The position numbers and the translations under genes are program-made. A DNA stretch of 64,000 nucleotides, from assembly GCA_028826165.1 (NCBI GenBank), contig JAPDFW010000011.1, positions 744,001-808,000 on the forward strand. Direction: 5' to 3'. Numbering within the stretch: position 1 is the stretch's first letter; each line of letters begins with the position of its first letter. Shown one piece after another: positions 12,454-14,751 of the stretch. The stretch comes from Anaeramoeba ignava BMAN (taxonomy: Eukaryota; Protista; Anaeramoebae). The notes below the pieces were generated by a model. It was not told where the DNA came from. It was given only the letters and a program-made list of their open reading frames with translations, and ran no database searches.

Positions 12454-12588
12454 GTCAGAATAGCTCAGTTGGTAGAGCGCGAAAACAACCTATTTGTCTC
12501 TTGACCTGTAGTTTTTCTACTTAGGTACGATTAAATAGGTTTATCACTTTGGATGACGAGGTCGTGGGTTCAATTCCCACTTCTGGCA
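12454..12588 (+). tRNA. tRNA with anticodon TTG (nominally Gln) and a 62-nt insertion at 28/29 (12482-12543)
   Basis: Acceptor GTCAGAA/TTCTGGC+A73; D arm GCTC-AGTTGGTA-GAGC; anticodon arm CG|TCA-CT TTG GA-TGACG; variable loop AGGTC; T arm GTGGG-TTCAATT-CCCAC; downstream T-run. Amino-acid identity is uncertain. Confidence 0.8.
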
Positions 12589-12630
12589 TTCCTTTTTTTT
12601 TGTTTTGTTTGATTTTGAATTTTAATTGAT

Positions 12631-12872
12631 TTTGAATATAAAAGTGTTAAATCATTCCCTTTTTTTAAATATTAATTTGCTTTAAAATCCTTTTCTATTC
12701 CTTTGTTTTAAATTGTTGATTTCCTTTTCTAATTAAATTCTTGCATTTTATTTATAATTTTTAATTTTAAATTGTTGTTCCACTTTTAATTTAATTTAAT
12801 TAAGAAATTAAATTTATTTTGATTATAAATAACCTCAAAAATCAAAAATTTTTTTAATAAAAAATATTTTAA
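12631..12872 (+). repeat. About 240-bp conserved spacer of the tRNA tandem unit (copies at about 13226-13475 and 14371-14616)
   Basis: Near-identical non-microsatellite sequence GAATATAAAAGTGTTAAATCAT...GTTCCACTTTT...TATAAATAACCTC precedes tRNA copies 2-4. Confidence 0.92.
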
Positions 12873-13010
12873 GTCAGAATAGCTCAGTTGGTAGAGCGCG
12901 AATTGCTTATTTTCTTTTCTACCTTAAATAGATTTAATCTATTAAGGTCCGTCTTAATAGGCTTATCACTCATAATGACGAGGTCGTAGGTTCGAATCCT
13001 ACTTCTGACA
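12873..13010 (+). tRNA. tRNA-Met(CAT), elongator-type, with a 65-nt insertion at 28/29 (12901-12965)
   Basis: Acceptor GTCAGAA/TTCTGAC+A73; anticodon arm CG|TCA-CT CAT AA-TGACG; T arm GTAGG-TTCGAAT-CCTAC; downstream T-run. Confidence 0.85.
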
Positions 13011-13475
13011 TTCCTTTTTTTTTGTTTTGAATTTGAATTTGAATTTGAATTTGAATTTGATTTTGTATTTGAATTTGATTTTCAATTTGATTTTGTATTT
13101 GAATTTGAATTTGAAATTGATTTTGAATTTGATTTTGAATATGAATTTGAATATGAATTTGAATTTGATTTTCAATTTGATTTTGAATTTGAATTTGAAT
13201 TTGAATTTGAATTTTAATTTTGTATTTTGAATATAAAAGTGTTAAATCATTTCCTTTTTTTAAATATTAATTTGCTTCAAAATCCTTTTCTATTCCTTTG
13301 TTTTAAATTGTTGATTTCCTTTTCTAATTAAATTCTTGCATTTTATTTATAATTTTTAATTTTAAATTGTTGTTCCACTTTTAATTTAATTTAATTAAGA
13401 AATTGAATTTATTTTGATTATAAATAACCTCAAAAATCAAAAAATTTTTAATTAAAAATATTAATTTAAAAATAA

Positions 13476-13609
13476 GCCAGAATAGCTCAGTTGGTAGAGC
13501 GCGAAACGACCTATTTGCCTCTTGACCTGTAGTTTTTCTATTAAGGTCCGACTAAATAGGTTTATCACTGAAGTTGACGAGGTCGTGGGTTCAATTCCCA
13601 CTTCTGGCA
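13476..13609 (+). tRNA. tRNA-Phe(GAA) with a 61-nt insertion at 28/29 (13504-13564)
   Basis: Acceptor GCCAGAA/TTCTGGC+A73; anticodon arm CG|TCA-CT GAA GT-TGACG (G37); T arm GTGGG-TTCAATT-CCCAC; downstream T-run. Confidence 0.85.
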
Positions 13610-13627
13610 TTCCTTTTTTTTTTGTTT

Positions 13628-14370
13628 AATTTTGATTTTGATTTTGAATTAATTTTGATTTTGAATTTGAATTTGAATTTGAATTTGAATTTGATTTTGA
13701 ATTTGATTTTAATTTTAATTTTGATTTTAATTTTAATTTTAATTTTAATTTTGATTTTAATTTTAATTTTGAATTGATTTTGATTTTGATTTTGATTTTG
13801 ATTTTGATTTTGATTTTGATTTTGATTTTAATTTTTTTGTTTAATTTTGATTTTGATTTTGAATTAATTTTGATTTTGAATTTGAATTTGATTTTGAATT
13901 TGATTTTAATTTTAATTTTAATTTTAATTTTGATTTTAATTTTAATTTTAATTTAATTTTGATTTTAATTTTAATTTTGATTTTGATTTTGATTTTGATT
14001 TTAATTTTAATTTTGAATTTGAATTTGATTTTAATTTTAATTTTGATTTTGATTTTAATTTTGATTTTAATTTTAATTTTGATTTTAATTTTAATTTTGA
14101 TTTGAATTTTAATTTTAATTTTAATTTTAATTTTAATTTTAATTTTGATTTTAATTTTGATTTTAATTTTAATTTTGAATTTGATTTTGATTTTGATTTT
14201 AATTTTAATTTTGATTTTGATTTTAATTTTAATTTTGATTTTGATTTTAATTTTAATTTTAATTTTAATTTTAATTTAATTTTGATTTTAATTTTGATTT
14301 TGATTTTGAATTTGAATTTTGATTTTGATTTTGTATTTGAATTTGAATTTGATTTGAATATGATTTTTAT
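13628..14370. repeat. (TTTTAA/TTTTGA/TTTGAA)n microsatellite between tRNA units
   Basis: Visible array; a shorter equivalent lies at 13027-13225. Confidence 0.9.
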
Positions 14371-14616
14371 TTTGAATATAAAAGTGTTAAATCATCTTCC
14401 TTTTTTTAAATATTAATTTGCTTCAAAATCCTTTTCTATTCCTTTGTTTTAAATTGTTTTTGATTTCCTTTTCTAATTAAATTCTTGCATTTTATTTATA
14501 ATTTTTGAATGTAAATTGTTGTTCCACTTTTAATTTAATTTAATTAAGAAATTAAATTTATTTTGATTATAAATAACCTCAAAAATCAAAAATTTTTTAA
14601 TTAAAAAATAATTTAA

Positions 14617-14751
14617 GTCAGAATAGCTCAGTTGGTAGAGCGCGAAAACAACCTATTTGTCTCTTGACCTGTAGTTTTTCTACTTAGGTACGATTAAATA
14701 GGTTTATCACTTTTAATGACGTGGTCGTGGGTTCGAATCCCACTTCTGGCG
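14617..14751 (+). tRNA. tRNA-Lys(TTT) with a 62-nt insertion at 28/29 (14645-14706)
   Basis: Acceptor GTCAGAA/TTCTGGC+G73; anticodon arm CG|TCA-CT TTT AA-TGACG; variable loop TGGTC; T arm GTGGG-TTCGAAT-CCCAC. Confidence 0.85.

What the first reader, a model, noticed from the sequence alone, without database searches (positions are those of the whole stretch)
12454..14751. One tRNA chassis, four anticodons: tandem family of near-identical tRNA bodies specifying Gln/Met/Phe/Lys
Seen: four genes share G(T/C)CAGAATAGCTCAGTTGGTAGAGCGCG...TCACT-NNN-NN-TGACG(A/T)GGTCGT(G/A)GGTTC.A..CC(C/T)ACTTCTG(G/A)C, differing at only a few positions, but have anticodons TTG, CAT, GAA and TTT. Stem differences preserve pairing (pair 2:71 is T-A, C-G or T-G; T stem GTAGG/CCTAC vs GTGGG/CCCAC). 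Identity-linked bases track the anticodon: A37 for Met and Lys, G37 for Phe, G73 only in Lys, A73 in Met and Phe. This argues for selection rather than decay. Known: tRNAs for different amino acids normally have clearly distinct bodies, and MetRS, LysRS, PheRS and GlnRS all read the anticodon. Inference: a specialised tRNA class that radiated by anticodon replacement (a second, separately regulated tRNA set), or a class all charged alike that recodes.
Basis: partly seen in the sequence, partly recalled or inferred. Interest (0 to 1): 0.92.

Follow-up and report, generated by a model that had tools for sequence, protein, structure and literature searches.

The report
tRNA-shaped Y RNAs with swappable anticodons
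Four near-identical tRNA-like genes of the anaerobic amoeba Anaeramoeba ignava each carry, inside the anticodon stem, a hairpin that matches the Ro60-binding site of Y RNAs; the same design turns up in unrelated metagenome contigs including a giant virus, so they are probably a so-far undescribed non-bacterial form of tRNA-mimicking Y RNA rather than a second set of working tRNAs.

Summary
The genome is Anaeramoeba ignava; ordinary Gln, Met, Phe and Lys tRNAs exist elsewhere, so these are extra. The insert holds CUUGAC...GGUCCGA, the Ro60-binding helix of Y RNAs, where bacterial YrlA RNAs carry it; the genome encodes three Ro60 genes with His187 kept. A bacterial YrlA beside rsr has nearly the same UUAUCA-CU-NNN-AA segment, so these look like un-permuted YrlA RNAs that keep tRNA ends and an anticodon hairpin. 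A fifth gene (Ser body) and same-architecture genes in four unrelated metagenome sources (one a giant virus; anticodon-like loops GUC, GCU, GUA, UUU) support a wider class. Anticodon loops diverge faster than bodies and spacers. Best reading (0.62): Ro60-bound tRNA mimics whose anticodon hairpin is a variable bait or docking arm. Main rival (0.2): spliced ectopic intron giving extra tRNAs; no BHB forms. Expression, splicing and Ro60 binding are untested. The scan noted the Y-like hairpin before on the fifth gene (s1-695169); the YrlA link and outside relatives are new here.

The parts
12454..12588 (+). tRNA-like gene 1, anticodon UUG at 12549-12551; mosaic of copies 4 (5' part) and 3 (3' part)
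12482..12543 (+). 62-nt insert at 28/29; hairpin with CUUGACC (12500-12506) facing GGUACGA (12524-12530)
   Evidence: (z -3.35)
12873..13010 (+). tRNA-like gene 2, anticodon CAU at 12971-12973
12901..12965 (+). 65-nt insert, about 75% identical to the others, same fold with compensated stems; GGUCCGU at 12946-12952
   Evidence: (z -3.59)
13476..13609 (+). tRNA-like gene 3, anticodon GAA at 13570-13572
13504..13564 (+). 61-nt insert with the exact Y RNA pair CUUGAC (13521-13526) and GGUCCGA (13545-13551), bulged C
   Evidence: (z -4.35)
14617..14751 (+). tRNA-like gene 4, anticodon UUU at 14712-14714, G73
14645..14706 (+). 62-nt insert identical to that of gene 1
12629..12863 (+). shared upstream spacer block (also 13224-13458 and about 14373-14607), 96-97% identical over the last 230 nt before genes 2-4; holds TATAAA 47-57 nt upstream of each gene; T-run 3-5 nt after each gene (Pol III-type layout)
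11934..12329 (-). first ORF piece of an NT-C2 (and downstream DIL) protein gene, head-to-head with the array; neighbour, no sign of a link

Best explanation
Pol III genes for tRNA-shaped Y RNAs: un-permuted counterparts of bacterial YrlA. Each transcript keeps tRNA 5' and 3' ends (7-bp acceptor stem, so likely RNase P/Z and CCA processing), D and T arms, and an anticodon stem that branches after two pairs into (i) a long hairpin with the bulged-C GGUCCGA/CUUGAC helix that Ro60 binds and (ii) a 3-bp hairpin that shows a normal 7-nt anticodon loop. Ro60 would ride on arm (i); the tRNA body and arm (ii) would dock or bait proteins that read tRNA. Tandem duplication plus recombination between copies gave one body several anticodons. 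My preferred use of that variety (inferred, about 0.4 within this model) is as a panel of decoys or sensors for anticodon-specific nucleases, tied to Ro60/RtcB RNA repair; tethering Ro60 to synthetases or modification enzymes is the next option. Shown: anatomy, motif, Ro60 genes, redundancy with ordinary tRNAs, outside relatives. Inferred: expression, retention of the insert, Ro60 binding, purpose.
For: Exact hY5 motif pair in the GAA copy (hY5 sequence from PMC5824348; 0 of 20000 shuffles hold both motifs, other inserts p 0.0002-0.02; GGTCCGA background 153 hits in the genome). Three Ro60 genes, K170/R174/H187 equivalents kept (H187 essential for Y RNA contact, PMC4030889). No classical Y RNA or YrlA found by Rfam models in the genome. 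In YrlA the Ro60 module extends from the anticodon stem and a YUAY motif opens the V hairpin (PMC4201824, 10.1101/312249); the Arachnia YrlA upstream of rsr reads GGUCCGA..GGUUAUCA CU GAU AA UGG.. then T arm, matching the window's GGUUUAUCA CU NNN NN UGA... Fifth gene on a Ser-type body keeps the same core. Same architecture with 7/7 acceptor, 4/4 D and 5/5 T pairs in L143/L152 (two genes), L147, L175 and giant-virus L171/L497; scrambled-motif control 0 of 24. Across 10 sequences the tRNA stems covary freely while the Ro60 helix hardly varies.
Against: Only one of the five A. ignava inserts has the perfect motif; two read GGUACGA and the CAU copy has a weak partner strand. The genes are not next to a Ro60 gene, and no Ro60 was seen beside the metagenome copies. 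Outside copies were found with a pattern that already held the motif, so motif conservation among them is partly built in. Perfect cloverleaf restoration and canonical anticodon loops are also what a spliced tRNA would show. A. ignava has other one-body, many-anticodon arrays with no insert (C104, C93), which this model does not explain.
Confidence: 0.62

Rival explanations
1. Pre-tRNAs with an ectopic intron at 28/29 (29/30 in relatives). Splicing yields extra Gln, Met, Phe and Lys tRNAs on one body, and the excised intron may itself be a small Y RNA, or Ro60 binding may gate the splicing.
For: Removal restores a perfect 5-bp stem and 7-nt loop in all four; C32, U33, purine 37 and G73 in the UUU copy are kept; several outside copies have bodies that fit their anticodon (Asp-like U1-A72/G73 with GUC); TSEN catalytic subunits and RtcB are present; ectopic introns exist in C. 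merolae (PMC3728597).
Against: No hBHBh' at the junctions (central helix 3 of 4, outer helices unpaired); all ordinary introns seen in this genome are AT-rich and at 37/38; the fifth gene would splice to an 8-nt loop; a GCU loop sits on a class I body in L143; bacterial YrlA keeps the equivalent arm unspliced.
Confidence: 0.2
2. tRNA-like RNAs whose conserved hairpin binds some protein other than Ro60, the Y RNA match being coincidental or vestigial.
For: Imperfect motifs in four of five A. ignava copies; strain variants of the giant virus swap the interior for an unrelated hairpin between the same acceptor and T arms.
Against: Both strands, the bulge and the position relative to the tRNA match YrlA geometry; Ro60 is present.
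Confidence: 0.1
3. Decaying tandem duplicates (pseudogenes or a tiny SINE-like family) with chance anticodon changes.
For: Redundant with ordinary tRNAs; genome is rich in young tandem repeats; some members of the C104 array have broken anticodon arms.
Against: Every stem change keeps pairing; spacers are 96-97% identical while the loop is 5/5 variable; only five copies genome-wide; same architecture in unrelated organisms; promoter and terminator layout intact.
Confidence: 0.06

Closest known systems
Bacterial YrlA Y RNAs (Rfam RF02553; PMC4201824; 10.1101/312249)
   Same: tRNA D and T arms with elbow residues; Ro60-binding helix extending from the anticodon stem; YUAY motif followed by a small hairpin before the T arm; several copies in tandem; Ro60 in the genome
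   Different: Not circularly permuted: ends lie in a 7-bp acceptor stem and the Ro60 helix is closed by a loop; a canonical 7-nt anticodon loop is kept and varies; eukaryotic Pol III layout; not adjacent to Ro60; does not score with RF02553
Vertebrate Y RNAs (RF00019; hY5)
   Same: GGUCCGA / CUUGAC helix with bulged C
   Different: Strand order reversed along the transcript; effector domain is a whole tRNA rather than a pyrimidine-rich loop; no RF00019 score
Ectopic-intron tRNAs of Cyanidioschyzon merolae and archaea (PMC3728597)
   Same: Insert at a non-canonical position whose removal restores the cloverleaf
   Different: No BHB motif; the insert has a conserved internal motif; genes are supernumerary
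Alloacceptor anticodon shifts in eukaryotic tRNA genes (PMC3923123)
   Same: Near-identical bodies with different anticodons after duplication
   Different: Four identities in one tandem array, all on an insert-bearing body

Membership tests
Y RNA / YrlA | Bulged-C helix with GGUCCGA-type strand | tested here: met
   exact in the GAA copy, 6 of 7 in the other four; hY5 from PMC5824348
Y RNA / YrlA | Ro60 orthologue with Y RNA-contacting His187 in the same genome | tested here: met
Y RNA / YrlA | Physical binding to Ro60 | not testable with these tools
   needs immunoprecipitation or gel shift
Y RNA / YrlA | Ro60 stem formed by the RNA's 5' and 3' ends (permuted tRNA domain) | tested here: not met
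   ends are in the acceptor stem; Ro60 helix is an internal hairpin
YrlA | tRNA-like domain with D and T arms, YUAY plus small hairpin before the T arm | tested here: met
YrlA | Encoded within about 4 kb of Ro60 | tested here: not met
   array on C2; Ro60 on C35, C85 (257 kb from the fifth gene) and C14
YrlA / Y RNA | Score above the Rfam RF02553 or RF00019 cut-off | tested here: not met
   (models assume the other topology)
Ectopic-intron tRNA | Removal of the insert restores a canonical cloverleaf | tested here: met
   for the four; 8-nt loop for the fifth
Ectopic-intron tRNA | BHB or BHL motif at the junctions | tested here: not met
Ectopic-intron tRNA | Spliced product seen in RNA | not testable with these tools
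tRNA-derived SINE or pseudogene family | Many dispersed copies with unpaired, randomly mutated stems | tested here: not met
   five copies, stems paired

The most novel reading that the evidence does not exclude
A widespread, unrecognised class of eukaryotic and giant-virus Y RNAs that are whole tRNAs with a Ro60 arm grafted into the anticodon stem: the un-permuted form from which bacterial YrlA arose (its 'V' hairpin being the old anticodon loop), used as an anticodon-programmable decoy or sensor panel in host-virus tRNA-cleavage conflicts.
Probability: 0.35. Interest if true: 0.92.

Novelty: new variant of a known kind. Interest (0 to 1): 0.8.

Why it matters
Y RNAs have been characterised in animals and bacteria; partners of Ro60 in protists are essentially unknown, and the origin of Y RNAs from tRNA is a stated but unproven idea. 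These genes give a concrete intermediate (intact tRNA plus Ro60 helix), reinterpret the YrlA V hairpin as an anticodon loop, give a search pattern that already finds the class in other microbial eukaryote-type contigs and a giant virus, and make the function of the tRNA-like module testable, because natural copies differ mainly in the anticodon. If instead they are spliced, they would be tRNA introns that encode Y RNAs, cut without a BHB motif.

Tried and rejected
Exact 5' body pattern in metagenomes: 0 hits. C76 candidate was tRNA-Ile(UAU) with an ordinary intron; C70 motif hit lay in coding DNA. Box C/D or H/ACA guide: no boxes seen, no Rfam hit. 'Only Phe tRNA of the genome': rejected, five ordinary Phe(GAA) genes on C89. 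No Anaeramoeba flamelloides Ro60 came up among the 120 best hits, so no sister-species comparison. A first script on aragorn output crashed and was replaced (139, 141).

Full report
Observation. The four genes lie at 12454-12588, 12873-13010, 13476-13609 and 14617-14751, all on the + strand, with anticodons UUG, CAU, GAA and UUU. The shared D-arm pattern occurs four times in the window against none in shuffles, and BLAST finds only these four in the 42.8-Mb genome. With it removed each gene is a perfect 73-nt cloverleaf. The inserts fold as one long hairpin with an internal loop (z -3.3 to -4.4). Each gene has TATAAA 47-57 nt upstream and a T-run 3-5 nt downstream; half of the best-scoring tRNA genes of the genome have a similar upstream box.

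Selection. All five positions 34-38 vary, against 8 of the other 68 (Fisher p 9e-5); every stem change keeps its pair; the 230 nt upstream of copies 2-4 are 96-97% identical, more than the inserts (75-90% for the CAU and GAA copies). So spacers are homogenised while loops stay or become different. The UUG copy is identical to the UUU copy over its first 95 nt and to the GAA copy over its last 35, which points to recombination inside the loop as one source of new anticodons; its G37 differs from native Gln (A37).

Organism and redundancy. A Ro60 protein of this genome is 100% identical to an NCBI entry of Anaeramoeba ignava. Ordinary genes with distinct bodies exist for Gln(UUG), Met(CAU), Lys(UUU), Phe(GAA, five copies on C89) and Ser(AGA); the shared body matches its cognate ordinary tRNAs at only 38-49 positions and is closest to Tyr among class I tRNAs (52-53). 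Ordinary introns seen (Tyr, Ile, Thr, Ser) are AT-rich and at 37/38. The four genes are therefore extra, and their insert is unlike this organism's introns. A bulge-helix-bulge cannot form at the junctions, although TSEN subunits and three RtcB loci exist.

What the insert is. The GAA insert holds CUUGAC on the 5' side and GGUCCGA on the 3' side, the two strands of the human Y5 stem (sequence in PMC5824348), pairing with the bulged C that is the primary Ro60 site (PMC4030889). None of 20000 dinucleotide shuffles holds both; for the other inserts the joint probabilities are 0.0002 to 0.02. The genome has three TROVE genes that are true Ro60 (E 3e-138 to the human structure) with the K170, R174 and H187 equivalents conserved. 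Rfam Y_RNA and YrlA models find nothing else in the genome (only top candidates scored). A fifth gene on contig C85 has a Ser-type class II body, a different insert sequence, and the same lower stem and UUGAUC/GGUCCG core; a model built on all known copies finds exactly these five.

Link to YrlA. In bacterial YrlA the Ro60 module extends from the anticodon stem of a circularly permuted tRNA, and a conserved YUAY opens a small V hairpin before the T arm (PMC4201824; 10.1101/312249). Joining YrlA's ends and opening its acceptor loop gives the layout seen here. My pattern scan recovered a four-copy YrlA cluster just upstream of rsr in Arachnia propionica (L235); its first copy reads GGUCCGA, then GGUUAUCA, a CU-GAU-AA loop and the T arm, nearly the same as the window's GGUUUAUCA, CU-NNN-NN loop and T arm. 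The other copies, and a few other actinobacterial matches, have variable or reduced hairpins there. I infer that the V hairpin of YrlA is the old anticodon loop and that the window genes are the un-permuted form.

Relatives elsewhere. A scan of metagenomes for UUGAC, GGUCCGA and a T loop (stopped at 120 rows) gave genes with complete acceptor, D and T stems around the motif, none of which the pattern asked for: a head-to-head pair with GUC and GCU loops in a eukaryote-looking contig (L143, L152), a GUA copy inside a tight tRNA array (L147), a UUU copy among dense intronless LRR and SH3 genes (L175), and a copy with encoded CCA (L171, L497, L498) whose neighbours include DUF5832, DUF5755 and 2C_adapt genes typical of giant viruses. 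All place the hairpin after position 28 or 29, behind an A- or U-rich linker, and most keep a CU-NNN-AA loop. A scrambled-motif control in IMG/VR gave 0 of 24 with a cloverleaf, and the true motif gave none there either. Over ten sequences, 13 of the 16 tRNA stem pairs change on both sides while the six Ro60-helix pairs have no double change, as expected of a base-specific protein site; this last point is partly circular for the outside copies.

How it likely works. Shown: anatomy, motif, Ro60, redundancy, recurrence. Inferred: a Pol III transcript matured like a tRNA, folding into an L shape whose anticodon arm forks into a Ro60-bound hairpin and a short anticodon hairpin. Y RNAs tether Ro60 to effectors; in Salmonella the rsr-yrlBA-rtcBA operon responds to anticodon-cleaved tRNA and YrlA was proposed as a competitive inhibitor of the nuclease (PMC7790460). 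A panel of loops on one body fits a decoy or sensor set for anticodon-specific enzymes; tethering to synthetases or modification enzymes is the alternative. Entry into the ribosome with a 60-nt arm two pairs below the D stem is unlikely (inference), so translation would need splicing.

Limits. No RNA data could be read. The genes are not next to Ro60. Two further one-body, many-anticodon arrays without insert exist (C104, nine copies; C93, five), so anticodon radiation is a wider habit of this genome that the Ro60 model does not explain. Paper searches found no report of such RNAs in protists or giant viruses, within a library that lacks many subscription papers.

Verdict. Confidence 0.62; interest 0.8.

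Noticed in passing
L060 (G000:C104:288264-292571, minus strand): Nine tRNA genes on one GA(A/G)GAUG body without insert; anticodons CCA, CAU x2, GUC, CUG with intact arms, CUC x3 and one AUC-like with distorted arms.
   Followed up: partly
L052 (G000:C93:543715-545225): Five related extra tRNA genes with anticodons UUC, CCC, ACC (unusual for Gly), UAC, GUC.
   Followed up: partly
L027:1501-1571 (G000:C71:170836-170906, minus): Intact tRNA with CUA anticodon (reads UAG), U1-A72 and G73; stop-codon reassignment not tested.
   Followed up: no
L492:11992-12112 and L493:2261-2381 versus L497:4818-4953: Strain variants of one marine giant virus keep the same acceptor and T arms at one locus but differ wholly inside: Y-type module in some, an unrelated AT-rich hairpin in others; L492 also has a nested palindromic insertion upstream.
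   Followed up: partly
PMC10226591 Table 1 (Chlamydomonas): The abundant AGO1-bound small RNAs longer than 26 nt start with (A/G)GGUCCGA and come from clustered loci of unknown origin; the paper does not mention Y RNA or Ro60. They may be Y RNA fragments.
   Followed up: no
G000:C84:334-338 kb, C72:289.7 kb, C1:1496 kb: Three RtcB loci and three Ro60 loci: an expanded RNA repair kit; one Ro60 paralogue (C14) has Asn at the R184 position.
   Followed up: partly
L147:810-882 and 940-1014: CAA and CAG anticodon tRNAs on class I bodies without a long variable arm, next to the Y-type gene in a tight array.
   Followed up: no
L235:3966-4500: Four YrlA-like RNAs in tandem upstream of rsr in Arachnia propionica, differing mainly in the V hairpin: a bacterial parallel to the window array.
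   Followed up: partly
window:20728-25170: Long ORF joining ankyrin repeats, a Ras-like domain and an RGS domain.
   Followed up: no
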